Shown: in pieces, positions 4,963-30,380 of the stretch
Layout: each line of letters begins with the position of its first letter
Numbering within the stretch: position 1 is the first letter of the stretch
NCBI RefSeq assembly: GCF_000143415.4
Contig: NW_003314262.1
Span: 2,239,046 to 2,303,045, forward strand
Direction: 5' to 3'
Source: Selaginella moellendorffii
Taxonomy: Eukaryota; Plantae; Lycopodiophyta
Length of the DNA stretch: 64,000 bases
Notes under the pieces: generated by a model
Told to the model about the DNA's origin: nothing
Database searches by the model: none
The model's input: only the letters and a program-made list of their open reading frames with translations
Translations under genes and position numbers: made by a program

Positions 4963-6899
4963 GGCCAAGGATTAGACGCGGAAACACTGGAGGATCGAGG
5001 TGGGACGAAGCCGTGAGTCTGGATTGGAATGGTGGGTCAATTCTCTCGAATCTGGGCGATGGCGAGAGGAGCGCGCGGGGAGAGAGCGGCGAAGAGGGTG
5101 CCCGGAACGCGCGCGCGATCTCGCAATTGGCGAGCGGTTCGCGAGCAATTTGTGTCGGAAGCTAGAAATGGGGCTTTGGCGCTTTCAAGGGATCCAAGAC
5201 CAAAACGACAATGAGGAAGAACAAGCGTGGGCGAGAGAAGGCGATAAGAAGAATCGAAGAAGACGAAGATAGTCAAAATCGCGGAGAAGAGAAGAAGATC
5301 AAGCAAGAGAATGAGAATTTCTTTGTCAAAGTGGAATGGAAGACCAAATGATTCGTCCCATGTCTAGAAATACCAGCAGCGTAGCGCAAGAGAGAGGGAA
5401 AGAATTCAACTCAAGGTTAAAAAAAAATGCTTGGAATATCAATCGAACGCTTCCAAGCAATCCCACGATTCACGGAGTGGGATCGAAAACTACCTTTCCA
5501 GTTTACTATACTATCAGCGCTGCGAGAGAGAGAGGGAGGGGTAAAAAGAAGATTGTTGTGGGGCGTTCAAGGATTGACTTGCTCTGTTTTATTGGACCTG
5601 GGCCGAGTAAATACGCTTGTTTTCTCTTACCCCGCTCTGTTTTTACGTGCTCGGCTGACCATGGCGGTGTCAACAGATAGAATGGTGACCTGGTGCGGTA
5701 AAAAATTAAATAAAAATTCGCCAACCAAGGACATTAAATGCAATGCGCAGTTGGCCGATTATCGCGCTAATCAGGTGGTCACACCTAATCACCTTTAACC
5801 AGCGCTTTACCCTAATATCATAAAGCCCTAGATAAAAGTCCGTCCAATTGGGAAGTAGATATCGATGATGAGACATATCATGTGGAGGTACTCTTTGCTC
5901 CTGAGAGAGTGCGCCAAATAAAAACCTTGGAGCTCGAAAAAAGAGAGCGAATTAATGCTTAAAAAACAAGAACAAACAAATCAAAAGAGAGTTCTAGTCT
6001 ATGTAGACGACGAACGAATGGAACCCTATACCTTACCTCCTCCTGCATGGGCGTTGTGGCCTAGATTACGTGCAGCGCATTGCCTGCCACCCTCTGGAAC
6101 CCTATTTTGTTTTTCTTAAATATCAGAACGCTGCAAAACCTACTGGTTGATTCTGGGACAACGACCACCCTCTCAAATTCAAACAAAAAGACCCAAACGT
6201 TGTTGCGTTGCTACTTAAATCTCCGCACAAATCAATCCCAATCGCCATCTCTCTGATCGCTCCCCACTGTCTCTCCCTGCTCGCTGGAAATCACTGCGCA
6301 CAAGCAAACAAAAGACACCCAGCCAGGAAAAATGCTAGGGTTCCAGCCCGGTCAAACCGAACGTTGAAGGGATTGACTTGACCGTCAAAGTGCATGCATT
6401 CGTCCTTGCTACTTGTTACCTGGAGCATTGAATTGGACGAAAAGAAATCGATCGTCGATTGGATTTGGATTCACAGCTCCAGTCAAGAATCGATCAGTTA
6501 GAGCGAATATCTCGCGTCGCGTTTGTTTGTTGTCAGTGGGGCCATCCAAGCCAAGATCATGGCATATTCTCCAGAAGTTTAGATTATTCTCCCTGGGCTG
6601 GGCAGAGACACGTAAGCTTCTGACACGCGAGGGTAAAGTAAAGGCGATAATACTGGTGTAGGTAAGTTGTGTGTGAATGAAATTAACCTGGAGTGCATTT
6701 AAAATGGGTGGCCATGCGAGTCTGTGACAGTGGTGTAAAGAAAAAAATGAAAAGATGGACGGACGCGGATTAATACCGCTGTCCCTGGGATTTGGAATCG
6801 ACGGCTCGTATTGAATTTGGCCACTAGCGGGCATTGAATTCAACTGGAAGAACTTTTTTGACCGGAGAAAAAGCTCGCTCGCATCGAAAAGACAAAGAG

Positions 6900-7869: not shown

Positions 7870-10800
7870 CTAGTTAAAATGCTAAACATTTTAGTGTCTT
7901 TTCTCTGATGAAACAATTTGGAAAGCAAAATAAAGCTTTTGTTTTGATTTGCATCAAAAAAAATATTTTAATTCAAAAAAAAAGTTAAATAAAAGTTCTT
8001 AATATAAAAATAAAAAAATTTAATCACAAATTCTAATAATTCACAACTCAAAAATAGATAATATATCACTATATATATATATATATATAAATATATTCTC
8101 ACATTTATGATCCTAATTATCTGTCTCAATAATTTTTATTCAAATAATGTTTACCAATTGAGTGAAGTATATAAATTTTGAATGAAAAAAGAGTTTATTA
8201 TACATATGAAGTATATATATTGTTATTTTATTTTATCAATTACATTATCAAAAACTCTTTGAGATAAAATTATATTAATATATATTTTCTAATTTATAGT
8301 ACTATATCAGTTAAATTGTTAAACATAACTACAAAGAAAACAAATTTAAGTTATAATATATGATTTTTTAATATGTTTTTCATTACTATTTTATGTCATA
8401 AATATTTTTTATAATCCATTTTTCAGATACACTATATTAAATATATAATCTTAAATATAATAATTTTATTATTTTATATAAACCATATAAACCTACAAAT
8501 GATGAAACTAGTTGTGCTACTTGCTGAGATTACAATAGGAACATTTTTGGTTCTTTGGTAGAATAAATATAAATTATAAAGTAATGTATTATTATAATTA
8601 ATTAATTGTCATATTTGCTATAATAAAAAATTTGAAGTACTAATTAAAAATTTTATTTTCTTAAAAAATTATATATGTAAAGTCTATATATACATATATG
8701 TATAGACTGTATTTGTATCAATAGTCATGGAGGAAGACTAGTTTAGAAAATTTAAGGATCAACACAATTATTTTGTTAAAGGTGGCAACATGTGATAAAA
8801 ATTTGATATGCTGATTGATATTCTTGACAATGATTATGAAATTACTCTTTCTCAGGCTTTTTAATATTTTTATATCCCCACATAAGTGGAAGTGAGGGAT
8901 AAAACTTTTTGACAAGATCCTTGGCTGTATTCAAGATTTTTCTACTTAATTTATTCTCCCGTTCTTTCCATGAAATTTAGCTTTTCCATATTGTCTAGAT
9001 AATTGATATTATAGAGCTAATGCACTAATAATACTCTAATTCTTAGAATCTCAAATGGAGTGAGACCACCAGTCATTTACAACTTCTCTATTTTTGTCTT
9101 CTTTTCAAGCTTTCATTACATTTGCTTTTTTTATCATGCCACCTTATACTAGATTGAACAGTGTATTATTGAAGGTTATTGATGATGTGTTAATGTTTTG
9201 ATCCAACAACATTATTCCTCCTACTTTGTTTTCTCCAGATTGAGCTTTATTGCTATTGGGCTTGATTTTGTTGGTGTTACACCCTTTGATGTGTTGTTCT
9301 TGATTTTTTATGGCATTTAAATTATAGAGTTTTGATATTCTTGGTGTGTTGCTATCTTTATTGTTATAGAGCATAATTTCAATTAAAGAGTTATGGATTA
9401 TATAATTTGGTTCTTGGAGGATGATTAAGTATTGAGTCAGGATGATGTTTAGAAGTTTAAGTGGATTTCTAATGATGAGGAATTTCATTATTTCAAGAAT
9501 AACTTTACAGATAACTTGAAAATGAGTTGGAGATTTCATAAGATAGGTAATCTTTAAAATTTGAAATATAACCATTTCTCTTAGTCTTCTGCTCTTTTTT
9601 TACCCTTTTTTACATCATAACATTTTTGCTTTATTTCCCCTCTCATCTATAGTATTTTCTTCTTTTGACATGTTAATTACTTCTGACTCTTATAAGTTTT
9701 ATTCTTAATTCAGTTCAGTGTTTATTATACTCTTCAAATTGATTTGAATTTTAAAATTGTATGTCTCACTGAGATTTTGCATTATATCTTATGCAGAATT
9801 ATTGATTGTTCATTTGGAGTTTAGTTTTAAGTATTCTTATGTTTCCTAAGGTTAAGTTACTTTGTGGTTTGTGATGGTAGTCAATAAACCTAGAATATGC
9901 TAGAATATTCTACCATTTAACGGTTATTATTCATTTAGATTAATCTTGTATTTATAATTTATAAATATATTTATAATTTATAAACATGTTTATAATTTAT
10001 AAACTTGGTTAAACACTTTCTAGTATATTCTTTTTCATTCTACCATCTAATGGTTGATATGCAATAAGATTAATCTTGTTTTTGTATATTATAAACTTTT
10101 ATTTGATCAATTAGATTCATAAATAAAAATAATACTACTATTAAACAAACCAAGCATTACTACATGCAACACATGGCAAATTTTTCTAATATTTTGAATT
10201 GAATGAATTTTCGATGATTCCTTTGTTTGTGAGTGCTATTGAAAGTTTTTATTTCATTGTTATTGTTAAAGAGTTTTCTTATTCTCAAAGTTTTTTTTCC
10301 TTTGTGGAGAGGATATGATGAATCTGACCTCTAATGTGCCTAAACGAAGTCAAAAACCAAACCTTTTATATTTTATTATTAGTTATAAGTCTGAGTTAAT
10401 ATTGATCTTGGAAGTTAAACAGAGGGAAGACGCAGAAATAAGTTTATCATTTGCTATATAGTGTTTTATGGAGTACAGTGGCCCTAATGTCTTAGCTTTA
10501 GTTCCATATTATAGATTTAGGTTTTTATTATAGTTGTCAACTATTATATCAATGGTTTTATAGGACCTTCAAGTTCTTATAGCTGTCTACACCCAAGAAA
10601 ATCATCAGATATTTCATTTGACTTAGTTTCATCCTCTAAGGTTATATATATATCAAAGCATTATATAAAGATTAATTAAAATTGAATTTGGTCATTCTAT
10701 TTTTTGTATGAAAATAATAATAATTAAGAATATGTATATGAACAATGTAACGAAAGAATTACATTTAAGCATTATAGATATTTTAATAAATAAAATAATG

Positions 10801-11539: not shown

Positions 11540-12393
11540 ATGTCAAGTCGGACGTCTTGCGTGGGCCCTGATGACCTCAAACCACTTCCGAAACTGGATG
11601 AAGTTCAAAGGGCTGACTGTCGACTCCGAATTGATCGTGGCCTGGAGAAGGCGGCGAGTTCGTATAAAGAGTGCTCAGGCACAGGGAAGGGCCCTTTTCT
11701 AGTGGCAGACGATGTATTCTACTTTAGCTTTGAGAAATGGAGTTCCAACTTTGAAGACTGCTGGAGGCCGGCCTTCCTCGAGGGAGAAGAGGGCTCAGTG
11801 TCTACATATTTGACGATCCCAGTAACGTCCACGACGAGACGAAACAGTGGTTCTTCCACAAGTTATGGACAGCAAGTGGAGAGGCACTTGATGCTCACGA
11901 GCCCCGAGCTGGACATCCGCTCCTTCGTCCGGGTCCTGAGATCATCTAGGTTTGCGCTTGTTAACGGGAGAAAGGAGCCAGACGCCTCTTTCTCCACGGC
12001 CTCGCCGAAGCATCCATTCCCTTGAGTAGTCCTTGAAGTGGCCTACAAGAACGAGGCTTTTGAGGTATTCGTCAGGGAACTTAAACACTGGGTTCGCTCG
12101 GGCTGTCAGCTCGCAATCGGGATACAAATCTCGTATGCCACCCTCTGCAACTGTTGTGGGTGCAGGAGGAAGCTACACAGATTATAGATTTTAGTCCTAG
12201 CGTTTGCACTTTGGAAACAAAGGAGGATTTCTTGGTGCGGTTCCTGTTCAGTATGCTTTCCAGCGATGTTCCAGACTGTCATGACATCCTACTCACGTTT
12301 GACCTGTATCAGCTCCAGTCGACGATCAAGGAGCTGGTGCAGGAAGAGTTTGATCTGTATCAGCTACAGTCGACGATCAAGGAGATGGTATAG
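11540..12393 (+). pseudogene. PD-(D/E)XK nuclease-like gene, copy 1 (disrupted)
   Basis: Colinear with 22026-22841 and 30381-31181 from about 11633. It has frameshifting deletions and an in-frame TGA at 12023-12025 where the other copies have CGA. Confidence 0.85.
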
Positions 12394-12520
12394 GAAGAGT
12401 TGGAGCAACCTTGTGAAGAATATGTCTCGCTCCTTAAATGAGGAACATCTTCAGTGGTTCTTGCTCCCAACTTAATCTTCAAGATGATTGAAGATTAGAA
12501 TTAGTAAAATCTTTAGAAGC

Positions 12521-12830
12521 TTAGATCATTGAAACGATAAAGAGCAAGGTCGAAATTCCTGCTATTGCTGCTGCTGCCGTGAAAGTTTCCAAATCTTTTC
12601 TCGAGATGCTACTGCCGGCGGCGCTGCTGGAGCTGGAGCTTGACGATGGCGGAGTGGTGCCGCTGCCTGTGAGCGATGCATTTTGGGGCAGTGATTTGGA
12701 AAGCCGCGGAAGAAGTACCATGATCCGGGCCTGGTCATTGCGATCGAAGTGTCACCGTTGTTGAAAGATTGGATCGGTGAGGCGCTGGAGCATCGGTCGT
12801 AGTCATCCTCGGACACTTCCAAAACGTCGT
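12521..12830 (-). pseudogene. Phytocyanin exon-2 remnant (exon 1 absent, internal deletions)
   Basis: EVSEDDYDRCSSASPIQSFNNGDTSIAMTRPGSWYFFRGFPNHC: the Cu-ligand Cys is changed to Arg, GQKLSIDV is deleted and there is a frameshift. Confidence 0.85.
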
Positions 12831-13869
12831 GGCATATAGAAGATGCTCCCGTTAGAAAACTATCGAGCAGGACAGGAAGAAATCAATGTAAAAAAGAATA
12901 TACTAGAAAGCGTTTAGGAAAGTGTATAAATTATAAATTATACATTAATATAAATGATTAACAACCATTAGATAGTAGAATATTCAAGCATTTTCTAGAA
13001 CTACCAGAAAAAAGAAAAGAAAAGAGAATTGTAATTTTGCTTTAACAAGCAGCAGATAGTTTTTGGAATTTAAAAAATCAGGCCTTTAACTAGTTTGTAA
13101 TCAAATTTAATATTAATAATTAAATATTTAGAACTGGCTAATGAGATAGTCTATGTTACCGAAATTGCCTTGAAAATCTCTATTTTCAAGCTACCTTTAT
13201 TGGTCACAAATAGATTAGACATATTAAACTACAGAACTCCATTGACTAAATTAGAGCTCCTTGAGCTCTTCCGAGAATTTCCAAACTGTGCGCACCAATT
13301 CGAGACAATCATTCCACAGAATTACGTCTTCACAGACACACAGTCAAAAGGGTCCTTTAGATGTCGTCTTGAGCAATAGATCATCAATAACTTTGCTCTT
13401 CTTTTTTATTTGGATGCTTAGCTAGGGTACCATGTAACTGTATTGTTTTCAAATATATAAGTCTCAATCCTGTATGTGCCAGGGGTGGAGGCAAATTAAA
13501 ACATGCATTTTAAACCTAATAGATACCATTGGTGGCAATAGCTTCAAGTGGCAAGGAACATAATTTAGATACGGGAGGAATTTCGGGAGCTGGAAGTCAA
13601 GAGAAGACTGAGTGGGTGGGTCTCATGCCTCCATTGTAATTTATAATAATTTCCTTAATCATTAAAATTATTCTAAATTGGCCAATGTGATACACCGGGC
13701 ATTTCCATAAAATGCCAGCTTTAGTGTTTTAGCAAAACAAAACAAATGTGTGTAGTGGGCATTTGGTCTACTGGTACGATTCTTGCTTCAGGTGTGAGAG
13801 GTACCTAATAATTGTCTGTGCACTAGACGTTTGTATGTAATATCCAAATTTTATTCTTGCCAAAATTGT

Positions 13870-14883
13870 TCACACCTTGGAGGCCAGCACAAGACCAGCA
13901 ACTCCAAAGGTGAGAGCAACGCTTCCTCCATACTTCCTTCCAAACTCAGCAATGTTGGTGAAGGAATCGATGGCAGCATAGCCCTTTGCGTAGATTTCCT
14001 TGCCGACGATATTGTAGATGGCGCGAACTGGAGCAAGCACGGCCTGGTATGCGTATGGCAGGTACTCGGTTGCGCCGACAGCATCAAATATGGAGTCCAA
14101 GAACCACTCGCTGTGAGTCGATGCTAGAACATTGTTCACCATGATGCTGCCGGAGAGAGTGAGCGGGTTGTAGAGGCCTACCTTCTCAACCTTTTGTATT
14201 TCTGGAAAAGTAGCACAGAATCGTTAAATTCGAAACATCCCACCAATATATATGCTTTTTGCTTTCCTTACCAATGATTTGAGATGATTCCCACAGGGAA
14301 TCTCCAACCTTGAGGTCCTCGGCTCTCTTGTACACGAGCTTCCCATTGACAGCAACGGGAACAAAGTGGCCTGCAGTGAGTTCCAACATGTTTGAAGCGC
14401 TGTGCACTTGGAAAAACTTGGACATGGCATCAGCATCCTTGTGGCCGAAGGCATACACATCTGAATAGATATTCTTCCCCACTGCAACCTGTGGAAAAGT
14501 TATACTTGGACAAGATTTATGTGAAAGTATTCAACCTTGTCTCCAACATTAAGCTCCCTCACGAACTTAATTTCTCCATTATACATCTGAACAGTTGCAT
14601 CTCCTATAATAGCTTGAAAATTGTATGAAAGAAAAAAACGTGAATTCATATGAACCCTACCTGGGAAGCATCCTGGAGTGGCTGGAGTGGCTGGAGGGGG
14701 TGGAGTGCCTGGAGGAGGAGTGGCTGGAGGGGGTGGAGTGCCTGGAGGGGGTCTAGTGCCTGGAGGAGGAGTGGCTGGAGGAGGAGTGGCTGGAGGAGGA
14801 GGAGTTGGAGTTTGTGCCACTGCAACGCTTGCAGCGAAGGCAATGAAAGAAGTCAGGAAGATTAGAGCACTGGTATGAGCCAT
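13870..14883 (-). CDS. Secreted Pro/Thr-rich peptide fused to a Hedgehog-type Hint/Hog domain, copy 1 (279 aa)
   Basis: Exons 14883-14661, 14603-14536, 14488-14272 and 14201-13870 (840 nt, all GT-AG, open frame). Signal peptide; Pro-rich repeat; G|CFPGDATV; VRELNVGDKV; LELTAGHFV (TxxH); RAEDLKVGD; GLYNPLTLSGSIMVNNVLAS; then an SRR-like tail with a hydrophobic C-terminus. Confidence 0.93.
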
Positions 14884-16200
14884 TTCAAAACTGCTGGTCG
14901 CTAACACTCTAGGAGCAACCCATTTTATAGCAGAATGTAAGCATCTAATGTTTGGTTTCGTGCACCAAAAATTCAAACACAGGGGACATGTAACTAGTGA
15001 ATGGTGGTCCTAATTAAAAATATTGAATCCTTCTTATTTTGGTGAGAACCTAAATACCATCCATGGAGAAACTAAAGAGGAAAGTGTTTTTATTAAAATA
15101 AATTTGTGAGGGCCAAGTGTACAGCTATAATATCATATATTAATATTAGCATAGTGGGATTTTAGTAGCTGTTAAATTGGTTTCAATCAAGATTACTCGT
15201 TCTTGTATATAAATTAGGGTTTTTGGGCTAATTTATATGCACATTTCTATATTCCCTTTCTATATTCCAAACATTCACATTGGTGGAGATGAGGGGCACT
15301 TTTAATTGTCCCTAAGGAGTGTTTGGATTTAGAATTTTGGTTTAGATTTATCTTTTGCATCGTCTAGATCTAGGTTTTTCCATTTCCTTTCTTTTGTTCT
15401 TTCCTTTTAGGATTTTGGTTTGGATAGCTTTTTGCATTGTCTAGATCTACCATTTCTTTCTAGCTTTTTGTCATTTCTCTTTTTTTGCTCTTTCTTTTTC
15501 ATTCGTCTTCATGGCAAATCAGTAATCTCCTCCTTTAACTCTAGAGTAGTAGTTGGTACAATTGCTTGATGCTATGCACTTGCAATTGAACAATTAAACT
15601 CAATTGATGGTGGCATTCACGGCACGTGGTCCAACTCTTCTTGCTCTTCGTGCCAATCCTCACGTTCTGCTAAAGTTCTTTCATGGGAATCCTAGGGATG
15701 ATGTGTACCATTGGTTCAATCACTTCACAGTGATTGCCACATATCATTTTTGGGATGATGCTCGATGTTTATGTGAGTTTCCCACATGTCTCCAAGGGAC
15801 GGCATTGTAATGGTACAATGGTTTGAGTGCAACCACTCGTGGAGATTAGAGTGTTCTCCTAGATGTCTTTAAACGCGCCTTCGGACATGCCGATGACTAT
15901 GATGATGCCTTTCAACAATTGCATCGTCTTCGCCAAGGGCCATCTGAGATAGTGATGCAATTTGGCATTCATTTCCGAAGTCTTTTGCTTTGTGCGGATC
16001 CAAATATGTCGGAGCGGATCAAACTAGGAATGTTGTGGCTAGCACTTCGTCAAGATCTTGTCGGACTTGTGCATGCACTTGCTCCTGCCACCCTTGACAA
16101 TGCTCTTCGCTTGGCACAACGTTATAAGACGTCACCTCTTCCACTTCTCGCTGCACGTCCTTTAGCTCCACTTCCTATAGATGGTGGTCCTGTTTCAATG

Positions 16201-16803
16201 TGTAAGCTCCTGAGTTTAGACTTCTCGGGAGGTCACCCAATCTAGTACTATTCAAACCCAAGGACACTTAACCCCAAATATCCTAAGACTCTTAACCAAT
16301 TGGAAAAGGGGGTGCACTCTTATTCATAGGCCCTTTCCCTCTATATTTGAACCCTATAGACCATCTCTCAAGTCGTTCTCTTTGGTTGCTTACAATCCAC
16401 CACGCTTCCCTACAAGTTCACGCCCTCGTGAATGGAAGTTGAGAGCCGCAGCTCTCTCTCGAGCCCTGCTCTCTTGACACCCTACCCCTCGGGTCGAGCC
16501 CAGCGGGAGCAAACTGGACCAGCCAGATGTCAATCAATGTCAATCAACATGTGGTGCAATTCCCTTAGCCAACCAACAGAGTCAGACCCGAGACCGTTCT
16601 GATACCAAATGTAAGCTCTTGAGTTTGGACTTCTCGGGAGGTCACCCAACCCAGTACTATTCAAACCCAAGGACACTTAACCCCAGATATCCCAAGACCC
16701 TTAACCGATTGGAAAAGGGGGTGCACTCTTATTCATGGGCCCTTTCCCTCTATATTTAAACCCCATGGACCGTCTTTAAGGTCGTTCTCTTTAGTTGCTT
16801 ACA
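16201..16803 (-). mobile_element. Cassandra-like TRIM with 5S rRNA-derived sequence in both LTRs, nested in gag of element A
   Basis: 194-bp LTRs at 16201-16394 and 16610-16803, a 215-bp non-coding interior, TSD CAATG and an iMet-type PBS TGGTATCAG on the minus strand. The LTR minus strand reads GGTTAAGTGTCCTTGGG..TAGTACTAGATTGGGTGACCTCCCGAGAAGTC, resembling the 5S A-box/IE/C-box region. Confidence 0.9.
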
Positions 16804-18526
16804 CAATGGAGGTTGATGCTGTTGCTGCTTGAGTCCAAGGACAAGGGCGAGGAAGTGGTCGTGGCCGTGATGTTCGCTGTTGGGCATGTGATGAAGTTGA
16901 TCATACTTATTGGCATTATCGGCGTTTTCCGGATTGGCGACCTCCATTTCCTAGGTGGAGACTTTGGCATTAGCAACGTCCCGTTGGTGCTGCTGCAGTG
17001 GACAGTTTGAACACTGCGATACATCTAGGAAATGAGGAGTCGCATGAGTAACGGAGGGACCTTATGCGAATAAGTTAGTGACCCCTCCATCTTTCTTTCG
17101 GAAGTATCATCAAGGGGTTCACTCGGCACTGGTTCATTCAGTGTTTACTTTCCAAGCTCATTTTTATAACAAGAGGTCTGCTATTATTCTCTCCGTGTTG
17201 GTTGATATAGGTTCGAGTTTATCTTCTATTGCTCGACCTGTTGCCACAAGTTGTCATCTACACTTGCGTCATGTGGCAGATCCGATTTTCATTCTTTATG
17301 GCAACGGCCGTACACATGCATGTGCATAAGATGAGGTGGACCTGGTTGTGCATGTAGGCGATCTCGAGCTTGAGTTGTAGTCGTTGCAGGTGGTGCCGAG
17401 TCAAGCTTTTGACCTCATTCTTGGTATAGATTGGTTGCAGCACAATCATACCAAGTGTGATTTTGAGGCTTCTCCTCTTTGTCTCATACTTTCTTATGTT
17501 TCATCCATTCCTCTCACTTCCGTACCTTTTCGTCCCTTTACTTCTACCTCTGCTTCCATTACTTTTGTTTCCCCACTATTTCCTCCTATGTTTCCATCTT
17601 ATTCTACTCTTCCCTTTTCCGATCCCTCCGACGATATTTGTGTTGTAGCGGTGGACTGACTCATGAAGGAGTATTCTGATCTCTTTGAATTTGACTTATC
17701 ATCTGGGGCCAAGATTGCCACACGTCATCCAATTCCAACCAAGGATGCTTGTCCAATCAAGGTTCCCGTTCGTCTTCAGTCACTCCGCGACTTTTGAATA
17801 ACACCCTTCTCCAACATCTCTTGGATATTTGCCCGTAAAATCTTGATCTCCTTGGGTCCTTGGGCATTTGAACCTCATCTTGTGACAAAGCCTGATGGGA
17901 GTATTCATTTCTGTATCGACTATTGTCCGTTAAACTAAGTGACGATCCCAGATGTATACCCTATTCCTCACACTGCTAATCTCTTGGATCGTCTGGGGCG
18001 AAGTCGCTGGTTCACCAAGCTCGATTTTGCTTCTGGGTACTGGCAAGTACCAATGGCCGAAGTAGATATTCCTAAGACTGCTTTTCATACACCATTTGGT
18101 TTGTATGACTTCTTGGTGATGTTGTTTGGTTTGAACAATACTCTAACAACTTTCTAGCGGATGATGTATGAGGTTCTTTGCGATATGCCAAAGGTGACTA
18201 CTGAATTCATTGATGATGTCTTGATCCACTCGGAGGGGACGTGGGAGGACCACATTTATGATGTTTGTAAAGTGTTGGATCAGCTACGCGATGTTGGTTT
18301 AAAGCTGAAGCAGTCGAAGTGCATGTTTGGGTCCAAGGACACAACTTATCTTGTGTACCGTATTTCTCGTGAGGGTTTGCAAGTTGATCATAACAAACTT
18401 GTGGCTGTTCTAAAGTTCCCTACTCCGAAGTGTGTGAATGATGTGCAGCGCTTTTTGGGCAAGGTGCAGTATCTCGGTCATTTTGTGGATCATCTTTTTG
18501 ATCGCACTGCACCGTTGCGAGCGTTG

Positions 18527-19679
18527 TGTAAGCCACAAATTTTTCCTTTCTAATTTGCCAGCTTACCTCGTTTATCTGGCCAACTCTGCCTTGGCTTGTG
18601 CTAAGTTCCCTCGCCAAGGTTCTCGCCCATGGTACCAGCTCCTACTTGGTTCTACTTGGTTTCAGCTACTCACTGCATGAGCAACGGAGTGTTAGCCATC
18701 CATCTACAAAATCCCAAATCTCTCCCAATCCCCCTCCCCGAGTTAGACTGGACTTAAGGTTCGGCTACACTCCCCGCAGGCACAAGCAACCAAGCACACC
18801 AAACCTCCAGATTCCTAACACCCCTTGGTACCACAAGACTTGATCATGGGACCCTCTAAATCCCAAGCCTTGGGTGCAACACTTGCTTCGGGACGTCGGG
18901 GCGAAACACCATGGCCTAACGGCCCGGTATGGGTACCTCTACGCCCCCACTTCTCTCCCAAAGGGAAGGCCCAAGCCCCTAGGAAGGGCGAGGACCAATG
19001 AGCCACAAGGTACTCAAGTGGGGCACCACTCCACATGAGCCGGGAGCACCTTAGTCGGTTTCCCTTTCGGGAGTGGGAGCTGCTCTTGAGCACTTCCCTG
19101 GGTGGCCCCTCCGGCACCACCCAAGCCCATGCTCACTCCCACCCAAGGCCCCTCGGCCCCAATCTCAACCTCAAGTCAGTTTGGAAGCACTACTGGAGAG
19201 TTCCTTCAAGAATGGTTCCTAGACCTCACTATCCCTACTATACTTTTGGAACCCCCTGCAGCCCCCCCCCCTCCCCCCCTGGGAGATGCACACTTTGGGC
19301 TTTCACCCCTTGAGCTATATTAGTATTTGGACTTAGTCTCAGAATCGATCTCGGACTCGATCTCGGACCCGACTTCGGACTCGGTCTCAGACTCAATTTC
19401 AGACTCGATCTCGGACCCGATCTCGGACTCGACTTCGGACTCGACCTCGGACTCCGTCTTGGACCCGATTTGGATCTCAGACTTTGTCTCGAACTCGGTC
19501 TCGAACTCGGTCTCCGATTCGGCCTCGGCTCGATCCCGGACTCTATCTCGAACTCGGTCTCTGAGTCGGTCTTGGACTCGATCTTCAACTCGGTCCCATC
19601 CAATGAACTCTTTTTGTCATTTCGGTCATGCTTTCGGGGATCTTTAGCCTACGATATCTCGGGGAGTCGGTTCCTTACA
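18527..19679. mobile_element. 1153-bp solo-LTR-like insertion in pol of element A
   Basis: Ends TGTAAG..CTTACA with TSD CGTTG. Element B shows the empty site (GCGTTGCTGAAG). Confidence 0.88.
19327..19600. repeat. Degenerate 12-bp tandem array (about GACTCGATCTCG) inside the solo LTR
   Basis: About 20 imperfect units, visible directly. Confidence 0.85.
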
Positions 19680-22025
19680 CGTTGCTGAAGTCATCAATAT
19701 CATCTTTCACATGGTCTCCAGATTATGAGCAGATGTTTAAGGATCTCAAAGAGCTATTAACGACTCCTCCGGTTTTGGCATATCCTGACTACACTTGACC
19801 TTTTATTTTGCACATGGATGCTTCTGATATTGGTTTTGGAGATGTGTTGATGCAAGAGAGCTCGAGTGTGCTTGGTCAGCACCATCCCATTGCGTATATA
19901 AACCGTACATTACAACTAGCCGAAATGAACTACTCCACGACAAAGAAAGAGTGTTTAGCAGCAGTTTGGGGTTTCGAGAAACTTCATGTATATCTACATG
20001 GTTCTCGGATGTTACTTGAAGGTGATCATGCTATTGTTACTTCATTATTGAAGCGGAAGAACTTAGTTGGTTATACTGCTCAATGGGCTTTGAAGCTTTA
20101 GATATATGATTTTGATGTTGTTCATTGCCCAGGGAGTTCTTTGGCTGATGCTAATGCCCTTTCTCGAGCTCGTCTTCTTTCTCCATTTTCTTTTCATGTT
20201 TCTAATGAGCTTGTTGTTCCAGCCTCTGTGGATTTTCTAGACGAGGATTCTGTGCCGTCGGCGGTTGTTGTACTTGACGTTCAGTGTCCACAAGGCGCCG
20301 AGCAAGATCTACCTTCTCTTGATGAGGTTCACGAGGCTCAAAAGATTGAGCTGTGGATTCGAAGGCTTTGAGATGGGTTTGAGAATGTTGCATCACTTGT
20401 TGATGACTTGCCTTTCCGGCATTTACATTCTCAATATCACCTCGAAGACGGCCTTATTTATTTTGTGGGGACGAATCCTGACGATCATTTACAATTGGTG
20501 GTGCCTTCTATCTTTATTCCGCGGTTTCTCCATGCCTATCATGATTCTCCTATTCTAGATGGGCATATGGGACATCGTCGTATAATTGAGAAGTTGTGCA
20601 GGTTTTTCTATTAGTTGGAGATGCGACGTGATATTATCTGGTATGTGCGTCGCTACATTTGATGCCAAGCTTGTAATACTCCCCTTCAGGCTGCGGAAGG
20701 ACTGTTGGAGTCAATTGCAATTTCCCATCCATTTGAGTTGGTGGCATTTGATCTTATGGGACCTTTTCCACGGTCGACTGTTGGCAATGAGTATGTTATT
20801 ATTATTTCTGACTACTTGACTTAATTGGGTGGAAGTTGGTGCTCTTGCTAGCGCCTCTGCAACTTCTATTGGATACTTCCTCCTCAATCGAGTGGTGTTT
20901 TAGCATTCTTGTCCAAAGCAGATTCTTTCAGATAATGGTCCTGCATTTATGGCTGAGGCATTTCATGTTTTGACGTCTCGGCTAGGGATACGCCACACTT
21001 TCACGAGTGCTTATCATTCACAATCAGATGGTCTGGTGGAATGGCTCATTCAGACATTCAAAGGAATGATTGCGAAGTATGTGAACTTTCAGCATTCTGA
21101 TTGGGATGGTTATTTGCATCTCTTCGGTATGCATATATCACAGGGGTATAGAGTTTTGTTGGTGCTTCACCATATAAACTTCTATATGGTCATGATCCAA
21201 TATTACCAACGGAGCTGGGTTTACCTTCGCGATTGCCACGAGCTGTGGATGTTAAGTCGTGGGACTAGTATTTGACGAGCATTCTTCCATTTGTCTGAGC
21301 AGAGTCTACTGAACACTTAGGCCATGTATAAGTGGGACAACAACGGTGCTATAACTCCCATCATCGTCCACCTGCGGAGTACAAAGTGGATGATTTGGTG
21401 CTAGTCTGTTTTCCCCATCTTATAGTATGTGGTTTATCTAAGGGGCTCCTTGCGTAGTGGAAAGGACCGTATTGAGTGTTGCGGCAAGTTGGACCACAAG
21501 TTTATTAGGTTCGGCATGACGTCCAGCAGATCGATCCTCAAGAGATTGTGCATGTGCAACGGTTGAAACGCTTCATACAAAGGGATCAGGAGCAGTTAAT
21601 ACCACCTATAAATTTGTTAATGCCTCCTCCTAACGTTCCTCCAAATCTTGGCCTGTTTACAAGAGAACCCTGATAGTTTTCTATTATTTCGAGAGGAGGG
21701 GATGATGTGAGGGCCAAGTGTACGGCTACGATGCCGTATATTAATATTAGTATAGTGGGATTTTGGTAGCTATCGGATTGGTTTCAATCTGGACCACTCG
21801 TTCCTGTATATAAGCTAGGGTTTTTAAGCTAATTTATATGCACATTTTTGTATTCCCTTTCCATATTCCAAACACTCACAAATTAAGATTAGTTTAAAGT
21901 TGTTTTACATTTATTTCTCACACTACTAATTTTGGGTTAAAAGCTTGAAAACTTCAAAAGGTTGATTTATTCCTTTAAATACCGTACCAACTGAATTTAT
22001 TTATTCCTTTAAATACCCTAATCCA

Positions 22026-22841
22026 ATGTCGAAGGAGAGACTGGATCATGGCCTGGAGAAGGCGGTGAGTTTGTACAAAGAGTGCTCAGGCACAGGGAAG
22101 GGCCGTTTTCTAGTGGCAGACGATGTGATCTACTCTAGCTTTGAGAAATGGAGTTCCAACAATGAAGACTGCTGGAGGCTGGCCTTCCTCGAGGGAGAAG
22201 CGGGATCCGGCGTTGGCAGTGTCTACATATTTGGCGATCCCAGTAACGTCCACAACGAGACGAAGCAGTGGTTCTTCCACAAGCTATGCCGGCAAGTGGA
22301 GAGGCACTTGATGCTCACGAGCCCTGAGCTGGACATCCGCTCCTTCGTCCGGGTCCTGGGATCATCGAGGTTTGCGCTTGGTAACGGGAGCAAGGAGCCA
22401 GGCGCCTCTTTCTCCACGGCCTCGCAGAAGCATCCATTCCCTCGAGTTGTCCTTGAAGTGGCCTACAAGAACGAGTCTTTTGAGGTACTCGTCAGGGAAC
22501 TTAACCACTGGGTTCACTCGGGCTGTAAGCTCGCAATCAGGATACAAATCTCGTATGCCACCCTCAGCACTAGCAGCAGCAGCCTGCAACTGTTGTGGGT
22601 GCAGGAGGAAGCTGGCAAAGGTACACAGATTATAAATTTTAGTCCTAGCGTTTGCACCTTGGAAACAAAGGAGGATTTCTTGGTGTGGTTCCCGTTCAGC
22701 ATGCTTTCCAGCGATGTTCCAGACTGCCATGACATCCCACTCACGTTTGATCTGTATCAGCTCCAGTCGACGATCAAGGAGCTGGTGCAGGAAGAGTTTG
22801 ATATGTATCAGCTACAGTCGGTGATCAAGGAGATGGTATAG
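22026..22841 (+). CDS. Intronless PD-(D/E)XK (Uma2/Crinkler-REase-like) nuclease, copy 2; predicted catalytic Asp changed to Gly
   Basis: 271-aa ORF with PSNVHNE, GSSRF, KEPGASF (KEPDASF in the other copies), PRVVLEVAYKNES and LAIRIQI. Confidence 0.75.
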   Translation: MSKERLDHGLEKAVSLYKECSGTGKGRFLVADDVIYSSFEKWSSNNEDCWRLAFLEGEAGSGVGSVYIFGDPSNVHNETKQWFFHKLCRQVERHLMLTSPELDIRSFVRVLGSSRFALGNGSKEPGASFSTASQKHPFPRVVLEVAYKNESFEVLVRELNHWVHSGCKLAIRIQISYATLSTSSSSLQLLWVQEEAGKGTQIINFSPSVCTLETKEDFLVWFPFSMLSSDVPDCHDIPLTFDLYQLQSTIKELVQEEFDMYQLQSVIKEMV

Positions 22842-22984
22842 GAAGAGTTGGAGCAACCTTGTGAAGAATATGTCCTGCTCCTTAAATGAGGAACATCTTC
22901 AGTGGTTCTTTCTCCCAACTTAATCTTCAAGATGATTGAAGATTAGAATTAGTAAAATCTCTTGATTTAAATTTTATTAAGAAT

Positions 22985-23372
22985 TCAACGAAGATAACGC
23001 TGCTCACATTGAAACTCTAAAGAGCAAGATCGAAATTTCTGCTGTTGCTGCTGCTGCCGTGAGAGTGTCCAAATCTTTTCTCGAGATGCTACTGCCAGCG
23101 GTGCTGCTGGAGCTGGAGCTGCTGGAGCTTGACGATGGTGGAGTGGCAACGCTATCTGTGAGCGATGCATTTTGGACATCGATGGACAGCTTTTGGCCCC
23201 CTTGGCAGTGATTTGGAAAGCCACAGAGGAAGTACCATGATCCGGGGGCCTAGTCATTGCGATCGAAGTGTCACCGTTGTTGAAAGACTGGATCGGTGAG
23301 GCGCTGGAGCATCGGTCCCAGTCATCCTCGGACACTTCCAGAACGTCGTGCCGTTGGCTGTTGTACTTGAAA
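22985..23372 (-). pseudogene. Phytocyanin exon-2 remnant (exon 1 absent, frameshift after MTRP)
   Basis: Near-identical to exon 2 of 31377-32027 but shifts frame before the Cys/His ligands. Upstream homology stops inside the intron. Confidence 0.85.
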
Positions 23373-24336
23373 CCTTGCATGCATAGAAGATGCTCCCGTT
23401 AGAAAACTATCGAGTAGGACAGGAAGAAATCAATCAACAAAGCAAAAAACAGAAAAGGAAAAAGAAAAGAAAAGAGAACGGGACACAATAGTTTTTCCTT
23501 AACTAGTTTGTAATTAAATTTAATGTTAATAATTAAATACTTAGAACTGGCTAATGAGATTATTCGAGATTCTAGCAAATTTAGTAAGATTGCCTATTTC
23601 AAGCTACCTTTATTGGTCACAAATATATTACTCCATTGACTAAATTAGAAGCTCTTCCGAGCATTTCCAAACTGTGTTCACCGATTGGAGACAATCATTC
23701 CACAGAATTACGTCTTCACAGACACATTCCCTTTTTAGCCGTCTTGAGCAATAGATCATCAAGGTGGAGGCAAATTAAAACATGCATTTTAAACCTAATA
23801 AATACCATTGATGGCAATAGCTTCAAGTGGCCCACTAGATTAAAGGAACATACTTTAGATACTACTTGCCACCAAAAGTCTATGAATTTGGGAGGAATTT
23901 CGGGAGAAGACTGAGTGAGTGGGGGTGGGGCATATTTGCCGGGCGCTAATGACCCTATAAATATGTATTAATAACAATAATCATTGTGTGAGTGCCTGGA
24001 ATATGGAAAGGGAATACAGAAATGTGCATCCCAATTAGCCCAAAAACCCTAGCTTATATATAGGAGCGAGTGGTCCGGATTGAAACCAATCCGACGGCTA
24101 CCAAAATCCACTACGCTAATATTAGTATACGGCATCATAGCCGTACACTTGGCCCTCACATCATCCCCTCCTCTCAGAATAATGGAAGGCCATCAGGGTT
24201 CTCTTGTAGACGGGCCAGGATCTGGAGGAACGTCAGGAGGAGGCATCGGCGGATCTGTAGACGGTATTAACTGCTCCTGATCCCTTTGTATGAAGCGTTT
24301 TAACCGCTGCACATGCACAATCTCCGGAGGATCGGC

Positions 24337-27300
24337 CTACTGAATGTCGTGCCGAACCTCATAAACTTGCGGTCCAACTTGCCGCAACACCTGATACGGT
24401 CCTTTCCACTGCGCAAGGAGCCCCTTAGATAAACCATGTACCGTAAGATGGGGAAAACGGACTAACACCAAATCATCCACTTTGTACTCCGCAGATGAAC
24501 GATGATGGGAGTTGTAGCGCCGTTGTTGTCCCACTTGTACGTGGCCTAAGTGTTCAGCAGACTCTGCTCGGACAAGTGGAAGAATGCTTGTCAAATACTG
24601 ATCCCATGACCTAGCATCAGGAGCTTGTGGCAATCGCGAAGGTAAACCCAGCTCTGTTGGTAATATTGGATCATGACCATATAGAAGTTTATATGGTGAA
24701 GCACCAACAAAACTCTGCACCCCTATGACATAGGCATACCGAAGAGACGGCAAATAACCATCCCAATCCGAATGCTGAAAGTTCACATACTTCGCAATCA
24801 TCCCTTTGAATGTCCGAACAAGCCGTTCCACCAGACTGTCTGATTGTGGATGATAAGCACTCATAAAAGTGTGGCGTATCCCCAACCGAGATGTCAAAAC
24901 ATGAAATACCTCAGCCATAAATGCAGGACCATTATCCGAAAGAATCCGCTCTGGACAAGAATGTTGGAACACCACTCGATTGAGGAGGAAGTATCCAACA
25001 GCAGTTGCAGAGGCGCTAGCAAGAGAACCAACTTCCACCCAACGAGTCAAGTAGTCAGAAGCAATAATAACATACTCATTGCCAGCAGTCGATCGTGGAA
25101 AAGGTCCCATAAGATCAAATGCCACCAACTCAAACGGACGGGAAATTGCAATTGACTCCAACCGTCCTTCCGTAGCACAAGGGGGAGTATTACGAGCTTG
25201 GCACCAAACGCAGCTACGCACATACCGGATAATATCACGTCGCATCTCCGGCCAATAGAAAGACCTACGCAGCTTCTCGGTGATACGACGGTGTCCCATA
25301 TGCCCACCTAGAACAGGAGAATCATGGTAGGCATGGAGAAACCGCGGAATAAACACTGAAGGCACCACCAACCGTAAATGATCATCAAGATCTGTCCCCA
25401 CAAAATAAATAAGGCCATCTTTAAGGCGATATTGAGAATGTAAATGCCGGAAAGGCAAGTCATCAGCAAGTGATGCAGGATTCTCAAACCCATCTTGAAG
25501 CCTTCGAATCCATGGCTCAATCTTTTGAGCTTCGCGAACCTCATCAAGAGAAGGTAGATCTTGCTCTACGCCCTGTGGACACTGAACGTCAAGGACAGCA
25601 ACCGCCGACAGCACAGAATCCTCATCTAGAAAATCCACAAACGCTGGAACAACAGGTTCGTCAGAAACATGAGAAGTGAGTGGAGAAGGAAGAGGAGCTC
25701 GAGAAAGGGCATCAGCATCAGCCATAGAACTCCCTGGGCGATGAACAACATCGAAATTATATATCTGAAGCTTCAAAGCCCATCGAGCCGTACGACCAAC
25801 CAGGTTCTTCCGCTTCAATAATGAAGTAACAGCAGCATGGTCACCTTCAAGTAACGTCCGAGAACCATGTAGATATGCATGAAGTTTCTCGAAACCCCAG
25901 ACTGCTGCTAAACACTCCTTCTCTGTCGTGGAGTAGTTCATCTCCGCTGGTTGTAATGTACGGCTTATGTATGCAATGGGATGGCGCTGACCAGGCACAC
26001 TCAAGCTCTCTTGCATCAACACACCTCCAAGACCAATGTCAGAAGCATCCACGCGCAAAATAAAAGGTCGAGTGTAGTCAGGATATGCCAAAACCGGAGG
26101 AGTCGTCAATAGCTCTTTGAGATCCACGAACGCCCGCTCACAATCCGGAGACCAGATGAAAGATGACGTTGATGACTTCAGCAACGCTCGCAATGGTGTA
26201 GTGCGATCGGAAAGATGATCCACAAAACGACCGAGATACTGCACCTTACCCAAAAAACGCTGCACATCATTCACACATTTCGGAGTAGGGAACTTTAGAA
26301 CAGCCACAAGTTTGTCAGGATCAATTTGCAAACCCTCACGAGAAATACGGTACCCAAGATAAGTTGTGTCCTTGGACCCAAATACGCACTTTGACAGCTT
26401 CAGCTTTAAACCAACATCACGTAGCCAATCCAACACTTTACAAACATCACGAACGTGCTCCTCCCACGTCCCCTCCGAGTGGATCAAGACATCATCAATG
26501 AAGTCAGCAGTCACTTCCGGCATATCGCAAAGAACCTCGTCCATCATCCGCTGGAAAGTTGCGGGAGCATTGTTCAAACCAAACGGCATCACCAAGAACT
26601 CATATAAACCAAATGGTGTACGAAAAGCAGTCTTAGGAATATCTTCTTCGGCCATTGGTACTTGCCAATACCCAGAAGCAAGATCTAGCTTGGTGAACCA
26701 ACGACTTCGCCCCAGACGATCTAAGAGATCAGCAGTGTGAGGAAGAGGATACACATCTGGGATCGTCACTTCGTTTAACGGGCGATAGTCGATGCAGAAA
26801 CGAATACTCCCATCAGGCTTTGTCACAAGATGAGGTTCACATGCCCAAGGACTCCACGACTTCCGAATAACACCCTTCTCCAGCATTTCCTTGACGTTGG
26901 CTCATAAATCTTGATCTCCTTAGGTGACTGACGACGAACAGGAACCTTGATTGGACGAGCATCCCCGGTTGGAATCGGATGACGTGTGGCAATCTTGGCT
27001 CCAGACGATAGGTCAAATTCAAAGAGATCAGAATACTCCTTCATGAGCCGGTCAACTGCTGCAACACAAAGATCGTCGGAGGGATCGGAAAAGGGAAAAG
27101 CAGAACAAGATGGAAACACAGAAGGAAAGAGTGGGGGAACAAAAGTAATGGAAGCAGAGGTAGAAGTAGAGGGATGAAGAGGTATGGAAGTGAGAGGAAT
27201 GGATGAAACATAAGGAAGTATGAGACAAGGGGGAGAAGCCTCAAAGTCACACTTGGCATGATTGCGCTGCAACCAATCCATACCAAGAATGAGGTCAAAA

Positions 27301-27680
27301 GCTTGACTCGGCACCACCCGCAACGACTGCAACTCAAGTTCGAGATCGCCCACATGCACAACTAGGTCCACCTCATCCCGTGCACATGCATGTGTACGGC
27401 CGTTGCCATAAAGAATGAAAACTGGTTCCGCCGCACGACGCAAGTGTAGACGACAACGTGTGGTAACAGGTCGAGCAACAGAAGATAAACTCGAACCTGT
27501 ATCAACCAACACGGAGAGAATAATAGGAGACCTCTTGTTATAAAAACGAGCTTGGAAAGTAAACACGGGATGAACCGGTGCCGAGTGAACCCCTTGATGA
27601 TACTCCCGAAAGAAAGATGGAGGGGTTACTGATTTATTCGCGCAAGGTCCCTCCATTACTCGTGCGACTCCTCGTTTCTC
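24337..27680 (-). pseudogene. Pol of element B (protease-RT-RNaseH-integrase) with a 1-bp frameshift near 26905 and a premature TAG at 24337
   Basis: VLVDTGSS, FIDDVLI, RVDASDIG, HHCC and DDE integrase, WKGPY; no chromodomain. Comparison with element A shows the frameshift and the stop are lesions. Confidence 0.9.
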
Positions 27681-29050: not shown

Positions 29051-30060
29051 TTACACCTTGGAGGCCAGCACAAGACCAGCAATTCCAAAGGTGAGAGCAA
29101 CGCTTCCTCCATACTTTGTTCCAAACTCAGCAATGTTGGTGAAGGAATCGATGGCAGCATAGCCCTTTGCGTAGATTTCCTTGCCCACGATGTTGTAGAT
29201 GGCGCGAACTGGAGCAAGCACGGCCTGGTATGCGTATGGCAGGTACTCGGTTGCGCCGACAGCATCAAATATGGAGTCCAAGAACCACTCGCTGTGAGTG
29301 GATGCTAGAACATTGTTCACCATGATGCTGCCGGAGAGAGTGAGCGGGTTGTAGAGGCCTACCTTCTCAACCTTTTGTATTTCTGGAAAAGTAGCACAGA
29401 ATCGTTAAATTCGAAACATCCCACCAATATATATGCTTTTTGCTTTCCTTACCAGTGATTTGAGATGATTCCCACAGGGAATCTCCAACCTTGAGGTCCT
29501 CGGCTCTCTTGTACACGAGCTTCCCATTGACAGCAACGGGAACAAAGTGGCCTGCACTGAGTTCCAACATGTTTGAAGCGCTGTGCACTTGGAAAAACTT
29601 GGACATGGCATCAGCATCCTTGTGGCCGAATGCATACACATCTGAATAGATATTCTTCCCCACTGCAACCTGTGGAAAAGTTATACTTGGACAAGATTTA
29701 TGTGAAAGTATTCAACCTTGTCTCCAACATTAAGCTCCCTCACGAACTTAATTTCTCCATTATACATCTGAACAGTTGCATCTCCTATAATAGCTTGAAA
29801 ATTGTATGAAGAAAAAAACGTGAATTCACATGAACCCTACCTGGGAAGCATCCTGGAGTGCCTGGAGGGGGTGGAGGAGTGGCTGGAGGGGGTGGAGGAG
29901 TGGCTGGAGGGGGTGGAGTGGCTGGAGGGGGTGGAGTGCCTGGAGGGGGTCTAGTGGCTGGAGGAGGAGTGGTGGGAGGGGGTGGACTTTGTGCCACTGC
30001 AACGCTTGCAGCGAAGGCAATGAAAAAAGTCAGGAAGATTAGAGCACTGGTATGAGCCAT
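29051..30060 (-). CDS. Secreted Pro/Thr-rich peptide fused to a Hedgehog-type Hint/Hog domain, copy 2 (278 aa)
   Basis: Exons 30060-29841, 29784-29717, 29669-29453 and 29382-29051 (837 nt, open). Same motifs as copy 1 except LELSAGHF. Confidence 0.93.
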
Positions 30061-30380
30061 TAGCTAGCTCGAAACTGCTGGTTGCTAACACTCTAGGAGC
30101 AAGCCATTTTATAGCAGAATGTAAGCATCTAATGTTTGGTTTCGTGCACCAAAAATTCAAACACGAATGGTGGTCCTAATTAAGAACATTGAATCCTTCT
30201 CACTGATTTTGGTGAGAACCTAAATACGAGAAACTATTTTTATTAAAATAAATTAAAAATATTTTAAAGTTGTCGTTTTACATTTATTTCTCACACTACT
30301 AATTTTGGGTTAAAAGCTTGAAAACTTGAAAAGGTTGATTTATTCCTTTAAATACCGTACCAACTAAAAACCCTAATCCA

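What the first reader, a model, noticed from the sequence alone, without database searches (positions are those of the whole stretch)
14100..14670. Non-canonical Hint active site: both Hedgehog sterol-transfer residues appear substituted
Seen: Cys1 and the block-B T/SxxH are retained. By eye-alignment to Hedgehog (YSEVxxFxDR and VLASCY), this protein has YSDVYAFGHK and VLASTH. The Asp that activates cholesterol appears to be His, and the second conserved Cys is Thr. Inference: N-S acyl shift is probably retained, but the acceptor may not be a sterol; it could be water, an amine or a wall polymer. There is no terminal Asn, so intein-like splicing is unlikely.
Basis: partly seen in the sequence, partly recalled or inferred. 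Interest (0 to 1): 0.7.

Follow-up and report, generated by a model that had tools for sequence, protein, structure and literature searches.

The report
Spikemoss Hog gene, histidine-type active site
This is an already annotated spikemoss gene, present twice in the window, for a secreted proline-rich peptide fused to a Hedgehog-type self-cleaving domain; its "odd" catalytic residues are the normal signature of a large non-animal branch of that family, and the histidine is a swap already shown to work in fly Hedgehog.

Summary
A 4-exon minus-strand gene (13870-14883) encodes a 279-aa protein identical to RefSeq XP_024535844.1, named "warthog protein 4", of Selaginella moellendorffii. A second intact copy lies at 29051-30060.

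HMMER and Foldseek alignments put His113 at the Hedgehog general-base Asp (D46/D303) and Thr198 at the second Cys (C143/C400). Cys1 and TxxH are kept, and there is no intein-type terminal Asn.

The site is not peculiar to this gene. Among the 150 closest cluster representatives:
- the general-base site is His in 125 of 128;
- the C143 site is free to vary (A41, S40, C31, V24, T12, P5);
- the next residue is His in 145 of 152, giving the motif S-x-H-S-x-W-x-L-D.

The engineered D46H Hedgehog keeps cholesterol transfer, and its crystal structure (6TYY) is the best PDB match here. Thr198 is not a conserved nucleophile. The acceptor remains untested; the C-terminal adduct region does not match the Hedgehog sterol region in Pfam.

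The family, including its Cys replacement, was published in 2008. This scan has already reported the family on other DNA of the same genome. Interest is modest.

The parts
13870..14883 (-). Copy A of the Hog gene. Four exons: 14661-14883, 14536-14603, 14272-14488, 13870-14201, with GT..AG introns of 57, 47 and 70 nt. The product is 279 aa.
   Evidence: Sequence read. The four exon translations occur contiguously and in order in database protein P0005, which is XP_024535844.1 of S. moellendorffii. Pfam Hint scores 94.3 bits.
14671..14883 (-). Signal peptide (residues 1-23) followed by a 48-aa Pro/Thr-rich cargo that ends in Gly71.
   Evidence: Translation. Paralogs carry other cargos: 3-6 aa, or a 4-Cys peptide.
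14668..14670 (-). Cys72, the Hint Cys1 (G|CFP junction) that forms the thioester.
   Evidence: Codon TGC. Cys in 88/88 relatives.
14441..14443 (-). His113, at the position of the Hedgehog general base Asp (D46/D303).
   Evidence: Alignments. His in 125/128 relatives and invariant in A2.
14366..14377 (-). Block B T135-A-G-H138 (TxxH).
   Evidence: T81/S50 and His 130/133 in relatives.
14095..14121 (-). Motif J and the residues after it: S197-T198-H199-S200-E-W-F-L-D205. Thr198 sits at the Hedgehog C143/C400 position.
   Evidence: Alignments. The 198 site is A41/S40/C31/V24/T12/P5, His199 is 145/152, Ser197 150/153 and Ser200 150/151. Asp205 is invariant.
13873..14094 (-). C-terminal adduct-recognition-like region: predicted helices and a hydrophobic tail (GGSVALTFGVAGLVLASKV).
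   Evidence: The AF2 model has helices at model residues 137-210. There is no Pfam match, and the Hint match stops at profile position 162 of 213.
29051..30060 (-). Copy B of the gene, intact, with the same splice sites (exons 29841-30060, 29717-29784, 29453-29669, 29051-29382). It has His113 and Thr198, block B is SAGH, and the cargo is 47 aa.
   Evidence: The DNA is 95.4% identical to copy A over 1154 nt.

Best explanation
This is an intact, annotated Selaginella moellendorffii gene for a secreted precursor, present as two tandem copies. The precursor has a signal peptide, a 48-aa Pro/Thr-rich peptide ending in Gly, and then a Hedgehog-type Hog autoprocessing domain. The domain belongs to a large non-metazoan 'histidine-type' Hog branch with the signature CFP ... 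Y-x-F-G-H ... T/S-x-x-H ... S-x-H-S-x-W-x-L-D. Shown here: the fold, the homology, the residue equivalences and their conservation. Inferred mechanism: in the ER, Thr135/His138 help Cys72 attack the Gly71 carbonyl (N-to-S acyl shift). His113 then takes the general-base role that Asp46 has in Hedgehog and activates a hydroxyl nucleophile, which attacks the thioester directly and releases the peptide with a modified or free C-terminal Gly. A branched intermediate on residue 198 is not required in this branch, because that site is freely A, V or P in relatives. For the acceptor I favour a membrane 3-beta-hydroxysterol or other lipid hydroxyl (about 45%) over water (about 35%) and other nucleophiles (about 20%). 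The reasons are that His is a proven working base for sterols, and that the C-terminal region is helical, hydrophobic and tail-anchored. This choice is untested.
For: Gene model and identity. Pfam Hint 94.3 bits against a cut-off of 29.7. Residue equivalence. Fold: AF2 pLDDT 91.9, with Foldseek top hits 6TYY (E 1.7e-11) and 1AT0. Conservation census. Lability of the 198 site: at least 29 state changes, 22 of them between nucleophilic (C/S/T) and non-nucleophilic (A/V/P) residues, on an 81-taxon ML tree on which His113 never changes. Paralogs in the same genome have A, S or V at the site. The published S. moellendorffii and Physcomitrella Hog sequences show YAFGHKD with S or A at the site (PMC2362128 supplement). 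D46H/D303H keeps structure, pKa and cholesterolysis (PMC9163320) and processes in 293T cells (PMC12054796).
Against: No Hog of this branch has been assayed, so cleavage itself is inferred. In Hedgehog, C143A and C143D abolish processing (PMC12054796), so a domain without that Cys might need a compensating feature that I could not identify. The C-terminal 84 aa have no detectable similarity to the Hedgehog sterol-recognition region, which weakens the sterol guess. Between the two copies there are only 4 synonymous and 5 non-synonymous differences, too few to show selection.
Confidence: 0.72

Rival explanations
1. One reading: the two substitutions mark a change of acceptor away from sterol, so that the thioester is resolved by water, an amine or a wall polymer.
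For: The C-terminal adduct region does not match the Hedgehog sterol-recognition part of PF01079, and the last 84 aa hit no Pfam family. Burglin 2008 named such regions ARR because the adduct is unknown. The cargo is an extensin/AGP-like Pro-rich peptide that could plausibly be wall-directed.
Against: His at this site supports sterol transfer in fly and human Hedgehog, so the substitution itself is no evidence. Thr198 is not conserved. The hydrophobic C-terminal helices and tail place the domain at a membrane.
Confidence: 0.3
2. Thr198 replaces C143 as the nucleophile of an oxyester branched intermediate, as Ser/Thr +1 residues do in inteins.
For: C143 forms a branched thioester in Hedgehog and is equated with the intein +1 residue (PMC12054796). 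Thr is a possible nucleophile. C, S or T occupy the site in 83 of 153 relatives.
Against: A, V or P occupy the site in 70 of 153 relatives. These include the sister paralog P0007 (V), the tiny-cargo paralog P0179 (A) and the published Physcomitrella Hog (A). There are 22 switches between nucleophilic and non-nucleophilic residues on the tree.
Confidence: 0.12
3. The domain is a catalytically dead relic that is kept for folding or binding only.
For: Two Hedgehog catalytic residues differ, and in Hedgehog C143A is dead.
Against: Cys1, TxxH and His113 are invariant or nearly so across more than 120 cluster representatives. Both copies are intact with their splice sites preserved. Decayed copies are said to exist elsewhere in the genome (scan notes, which I did not check), which would suggest that unused copies do decay.
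Confidence: 0.06

Closest known systems
Drosophila Hedgehog autoprocessing domain, engineered D46H (D303H) variant, PDB 6TYY (Zhao et al. 2019, as summarised in PMC9163320)
   Same: Same Hint fold, with Cys1, TxxH and His at the general-base site. It is the best sequence match and the best structure match in the PDB. It shows that His can serve as the general base for sterol attack.
   Different: 6TYY keeps Cys143-Tyr144 and the Hedgehog sterol-recognition region, whereas this protein has Thr198-His199 and an unrelated-looking C-terminal region. Here the His is natural and family-wide, not engineered.
Plant Hog proteins pSm Hog (S. moellendorffii EST) and pPp Hog (Physcomitrella), Burglin 2008, PMC2362128
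   Same: Same family and, for pSm Hog, the same genome: CFPGDATV..., YAFGHKD, xHSEWFLD, motif K and a hydrophobic tail. The paper already states that the motif J Cys is replaced by Ser, Thr or Asp in moss and red-algal Hogs.
   Different: pSm Hog has a 3-4 aa cargo and Ser at the site, and pPp Hog has a 230-aa cargo and Ala. This paralog has a 48-aa Pro/Thr cargo and Thr. The main text of the paper never uses the word histidine, so the general-base His is not discussed there.
Wild-type metazoan Hedgehog HhC (1AT0; SHH)
   Same: The Hint fold, the G|CF junction, TxxH, a secretory-pathway precursor and a C-terminal helical extension.
   Different: Hedgehog has Asp46 and Cys143, where C143A/D are dead and a branched thioester has been reported (PMC12054796). 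It also has sterol-recognition motifs, which Pfam does not detect here.
Class 1 inteins and bacterial intein-like (BIL) domains
   Same: The Hint fold and block A/B chemistry. They appear as weaker Foldseek hits, for example the gp41-1, DnaB and BIL2 entries.
   Different: There is no C-terminal His-Asn, no +1 extein nucleophile and no C-extein, and the domain is not inserted in a host protein.

Membership tests
Hedgehog-type Hog / Hint module (Pfam PF01079) | Profile score above the curated cut-off | tested here: met
   94.3 bits against a cut-off of 29.7, residues 69-201 on profile positions 10-162 of 213. The exon pieces hit collinearly.
Hedgehog-type Hog / Hint module (Pfam PF01079) | Hint beta fold | tested here: met
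   AF2 model with pLDDT 91.9 and pTM 0.88. Foldseek top hits are 6TYY and 1AT0, TM-score 0.79-0.80 by target length.
Hedgehog-type Hog / Hint module (Pfam PF01079) | Gly|Cys-Phe junction with the nucleophilic Cys1 | tested here: met
   G71|C72-F-P. Cys in 88/88 relatives.
Hedgehog-type Hog / Hint module (Pfam PF01079) | Block B T/SxxH | tested here: met
   T135-A-G-H138 in copy A and SAGH in copy B.
Hedgehog HhC proper (cholesterol-transferring) | General-base Asp (D46/D303) | tested here: not met
   His113 aligns there. A functional equivalent is known from the D46H variant.
Hedgehog HhC proper (cholesterol-transferring) | Second catalytic Cys (C143/C400) | tested here: not met
   Thr198 aligns there, and the site varies in relatives.
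Hedgehog HhC proper (cholesterol-transferring) | Sterol-recognition region (motifs K and L) | tested here: inconclusive
   The Pfam match ends at profile position 162 of 213, and the last 84 aa hit nothing. The profile-to-PDB alignments with full-length Hh and SHH stop at motif J. Burglin 2008 reports motif K in moss and lycophyte Hogs. The model predicts six helices there.
Hedgehog HhC proper (cholesterol-transferring) | Sterol esterification of the released N-terminal product | not testable with these tools
   This needs biochemistry or mass spectrometry.
Plant / non-metazoan Hog family (Burglin 2008) | Close similarity to pSm and pPp Hog, with the YAFGHKD and xHSEWFLD signatures, a signal peptide and a hydrophobic C-terminal tail | tested here: met
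   Identity to S. moellendorffii paralogs is 55-95%.
Intein (class 1) | C-terminal His-Asn followed by a Cys/Ser/Thr +1 residue of a C-extein, with the domain inserted in a host protein | tested here: not met
   The protein ends ...LVLASKV, motif J is ASTHS, and nothing follows the Hog domain.
C. elegans warthog proteins (the RefSeq name of this gene) | An N-terminal Wart domain ahead of the Hog domain | tested here: not met
   After the signal peptide the N-terminal part is only a 48-aa Pro/Thr repeat without Cys. Pfam finds only Hint-type families. The name comes from homology transfer through the Hog domain.

The most novel reading that the evidence does not exclude
Histidine-type Hogs are a natural, ancient version of the D46H swap that transfers the cargo to a sterol or other membrane lipid without the C143 branched intermediate. 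Alternatively, the intermediate has moved to the nearly invariant His199-Ser200 pair of the S-x-H-S motif. In this gene the result would be a lipid-anchored hydroxyproline-rich glycopeptide in a land plant. That would make protein sterylation far older and wider than animal Hedgehog signalling.
Probability: 0.15. Interest if true: 0.75.

Novelty: already known. Interest (0 to 1): 0.33.

Why it matters
Hedgehog enzymology treats Asp46 and Cys143 as conserved and essential, and a 2025 paper makes the C143 branched thioester an obligatory step. The census here shows a large natural branch of the same domain, in green algae, mosses, lycophytes and many unnamed eukaryotic sequences. In that branch the base is always His and the C143 site can be Ala, Val or Pro. 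That gives a ready-made natural test of whether the branched step is universal. It also shows what His does as a native general base. The gene itself and its family are known, and no function is shown, so this is context and a testable lead rather than a discovery.

Tried and rejected
1. Spliced model. I searched the gene exon by exon, by reference, and did not build or submit a joined model. The big search returned database protein P0005, which holds the four exon translations contiguously, and I used that id afterwards.

2. The word search with exon 4 could only see proteins of 60-190 aa and returned fragmentary S. moellendorffii models. I therefore used the exhaustive search once, with a profile of the exon pieces and those hits.

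3. The Asp of H-K-D as the real base: rejected. No alignment shifts to it, and it is only 86/128 conserved.

4. Thr198 as an essential nucleophile: rejected on conservation and the tree.

5. Selection between copies A and B: pN/pS is 0.37 but rests on 9 differences, so it is uninformative.

6. Covariation. The three sequences with Asp just before the His (F-D-H) are the only ones with Tyr or Phe in place of His199. They may form one small clade, so I take this only as a hint that His199 lies near the base.

8. The primary D46H paper (JACS 2019) is not held. I relied on the review PMC9163320 and on PMC12054796.

9. The OCR of Burglin's alignment supplement has shifted row labels. I used only the sequence list (file 5), not the alignment rows.

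10. The tools do not expose model coordinates, so I could not measure distances between Cys72, His113, Thr198, His199 and Ser200.

Full report
WHAT IS THERE

My model has four exons: 14661-14883, 14536-14603, 14272-14488 and 13870-14201.

The three Hint-bearing exons hit Pfam Hint (PF01079) collinearly, on profile positions 17-38, 46-91 and 132-162. The exhaustive protein search later returned a 279-aa database protein, P0005. It contains the four exon translations contiguously and in order. P0005 is RefSeq XP_024535844.1, "warthog protein 4" of Selaginella moellendorffii. The model is therefore the annotated one, and the window is spikemoss DNA.

The protein has three parts:
- a signal peptide, residues 1-23;
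- a 48-aa Pro/Thr-rich peptide ending in Gly71;
- a Hog domain from Cys72 to the end.

A second intact copy lies at 29051-30060 on the same strand. It has the same splice sites, a 47-aa cargo, 98-100% identical Hog exons, and SAGH instead of TAGH in block B. The DNA of the two copies is 95.4% identical. Two Ty3/gypsy retroelements lie between them in inverted orientation.

THE OBSERVATION

The eye alignment is correct.
- phmmer of exon 3 against PDB sequences aligns YSDVYAFGHKD to YSEVILFM(D/H)RN of fly Hedgehog without a gap. The best hit is 6TYY, the D46H mutant, ahead of wild-type 1AT0.
- Exon 4 aligns VLASTHS to VLASCYA of human SHH.
- A profile of 81 relatives aligns to 6TYY over 144 residues with a single 1-residue gap (E 2.9e-33). 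It puts the family His on residue 46, the variable site on Cys143 and the family His199 on Tyr144.
- An AlphaFold2 model of residues 69-279 is confident (pLDDT 91.9, pTM 0.88). It shows a beta Hint core followed by six helices. Its best Foldseek matches in the PDB are 6TYY (E 1.7e-11) and 1AT0, then BIL domains and inteins.

No method produced it, and that Asp is only 86/128 conserved.

HOW SPECIAL IS IT?

It is not special to this gene. The exhaustive search found 3049 relatives. I aligned the 150 best cluster representatives to a family HMM and read the key columns.

| Site | Residues in relatives |
|---|---|
| Cys1 | C 88/88 |
| General-base site (His113) | H 125/128, E 2, D 1 |
| Block B first residue | T 81, S 50 |
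| Block B His | H 130/133 |
| C143-equivalent site (Thr198) | A 41, S 40, C 31, V 24, T 12, P 5 |
| Next residue (His199) | H 145/152 |
| Flanking Ser residues (197, 200) | S 150/153 and S 150/151 |

In an 81-domain MAFFT alignment the invariant columns are Cys72, Phe73, His113, His138, Gly178, Ser200 and Asp205. The domain thus belongs to a large "histidine-type" Hog branch with the motif S-x-H-S-x-W-x-L-D.

On a maximum-likelihood tree of the 81 domains, the C143-equivalent site needs at least 29 changes. Of these, 22 are between nucleophilic (C/S/T) and non-nucleophilic (A/V/P) residues. His113 never changes.

Within S. moellendorffii, Thr occurs in the Pro-rich-cargo paralogs. The tiny-cargo and 4-Cys-cargo paralogs have A, S or V, and all have His. 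Named relatives come from S. moellendorffii, the lycophyte Diphasiastrum, the moss Ceratodon and the green alga Gonium. Many others come from unnamed metagenomes and metatranscriptomes.

WHAT IS ALREADY PUBLISHED

Burglin 2008 (PMC2362128) described Hog proteins in Selaginella and Physcomitrella. [quoted passage not shown] Its sequence list gives:
- pSm Hog with YAFGHKD and EASSHSEW;
- pPp Hog with YAFGHKD and AASAHSEW.

The His is visible there, but the word histidine does not occur in the paper's main text, so it is not discussed.

The D303H (D46H) variant of fly Hedgehog keeps its structure (RMSD 0.4 A), pKa and cholesterolysis efficiency. It gains activity on coprostanol and epicoprostanol (review PMC9163320). 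D46H SHH also autoprocesses in 293T cells, while C1A, C143A and C143D do not (PMC12054796). The same paper proposes that C143 carries a branched thioester equivalent to the intein +1 step.

I found no paper testing any plant or algal Hog.

HOW IT MOST LIKELY WORKS

Shown here: the fold, the homology, the residue equivalences and the conservation.

Inferred:
- Thr135/His138 assist Cys72 in the N-to-S acyl shift at Gly71.
- His113 acts as the general base for an incoming hydroxyl nucleophile.
- The thioester is resolved directly. A nucleophile at residue 198 cannot be essential in a branch where Ala, Val and Pro are common.

The acceptor is open.
- For a sterol or membrane lipid: His is a proven base for sterols, and the C-terminal region is helical with a hydrophobic tail.
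- Against: this region does not match the sterol-recognition part of PF01079 (the match ends at 162 of 213), and the last 84 residues hit no family.

My odds are about 45% sterol or lipid, 35% water and 20% something else.

The nearly invariant His199/Ser200 and the invariant Asp205 are the conserved features after motif J, and they are unexplained. One small covariation hints that His199 sits near the base. The three sequences with F-D-H instead of F-G-H are the only ones with Tyr or Phe at the 199 position. They may represent a single evolutionary event.

However, neither substitution is evidence about the acceptor, and the pattern is the family norm rather than a peculiarity.

NOVELTY

The gene is annotated and the family is published, including the Cys replacement. 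Earlier notes of this scan already reported the family on other DNA of the same genome.

LIMITS

- The primary D46H paper is not held.

Noticed in passing
window 15090-21883 (+) and 23983-29001 (-): Two copies of a Ty3/gypsy LTR retroelement, about 89% identical, lie in inverted orientation between the two Hog copies. The minus-strand copy has long gag, protease and RT-RNaseH-integrase ORFs (24337-28735). The plus-strand copy has no long ORFs.
   Followed up: partly
window 11633-13340, 21880-23407, 30250-31784: A 1.5-1.7 kb unit is repeated three times at 82-92% identity, next to the Hog copies and the retroelements. It carries ORFs of 161-271 aa (for example 22026-22841 and 30381-31181) with no Pfam match.
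   Followed up: partly
L001:1080-1964 and 6001-6691 (S. moellendorffii GL377687.1): Another tandem pair of Hog genes in the same species has a cargo of only about 6 residues (TNTNNS) between the signal peptide and Cys1. Other paralogs carry a 4-Cys peptide. With almost no cargo, the product that matters may not be the released peptide.
   Followed up: partly
P0111, P0137, P0140 (unnamed relatives): These three relatives have F-D-H instead of F-G-H at the base, and they alone have Tyr or Phe instead of the family His after the C143-equivalent site. This is a possible coupled change, like the Hedgehog 'CY' state.
   Followed up: partly
P0018 (Logan contig, 309 aa): This relative has a chitin-binding (hevein, PF00187) Cys-rich domain as cargo ahead of the Hog domain, and Cys at the C143-equivalent site.
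   Followed up: no
window 45266-45350 (-): An 85-nt tRNA with anticodon CAT. ARAGORN could not name the isotype, and Rfam tRNA scores 46.7 bits. It may contain an intron.
   Followed up: no
window 8001-10000 and 54001-56000: Two very AT-rich stretches (23-25% G+C) in a window that otherwise has 42-51% G+C. The second lies next to internal repeats at 54075-57475.
   Followed up: no
P0005 / XP_024535844.1: The RefSeq name 'warthog protein 4' is a homology-transfer misnomer. The protein shares only the Hog domain with nematode warthogs and has no Wart domain.
   Followed up: yes
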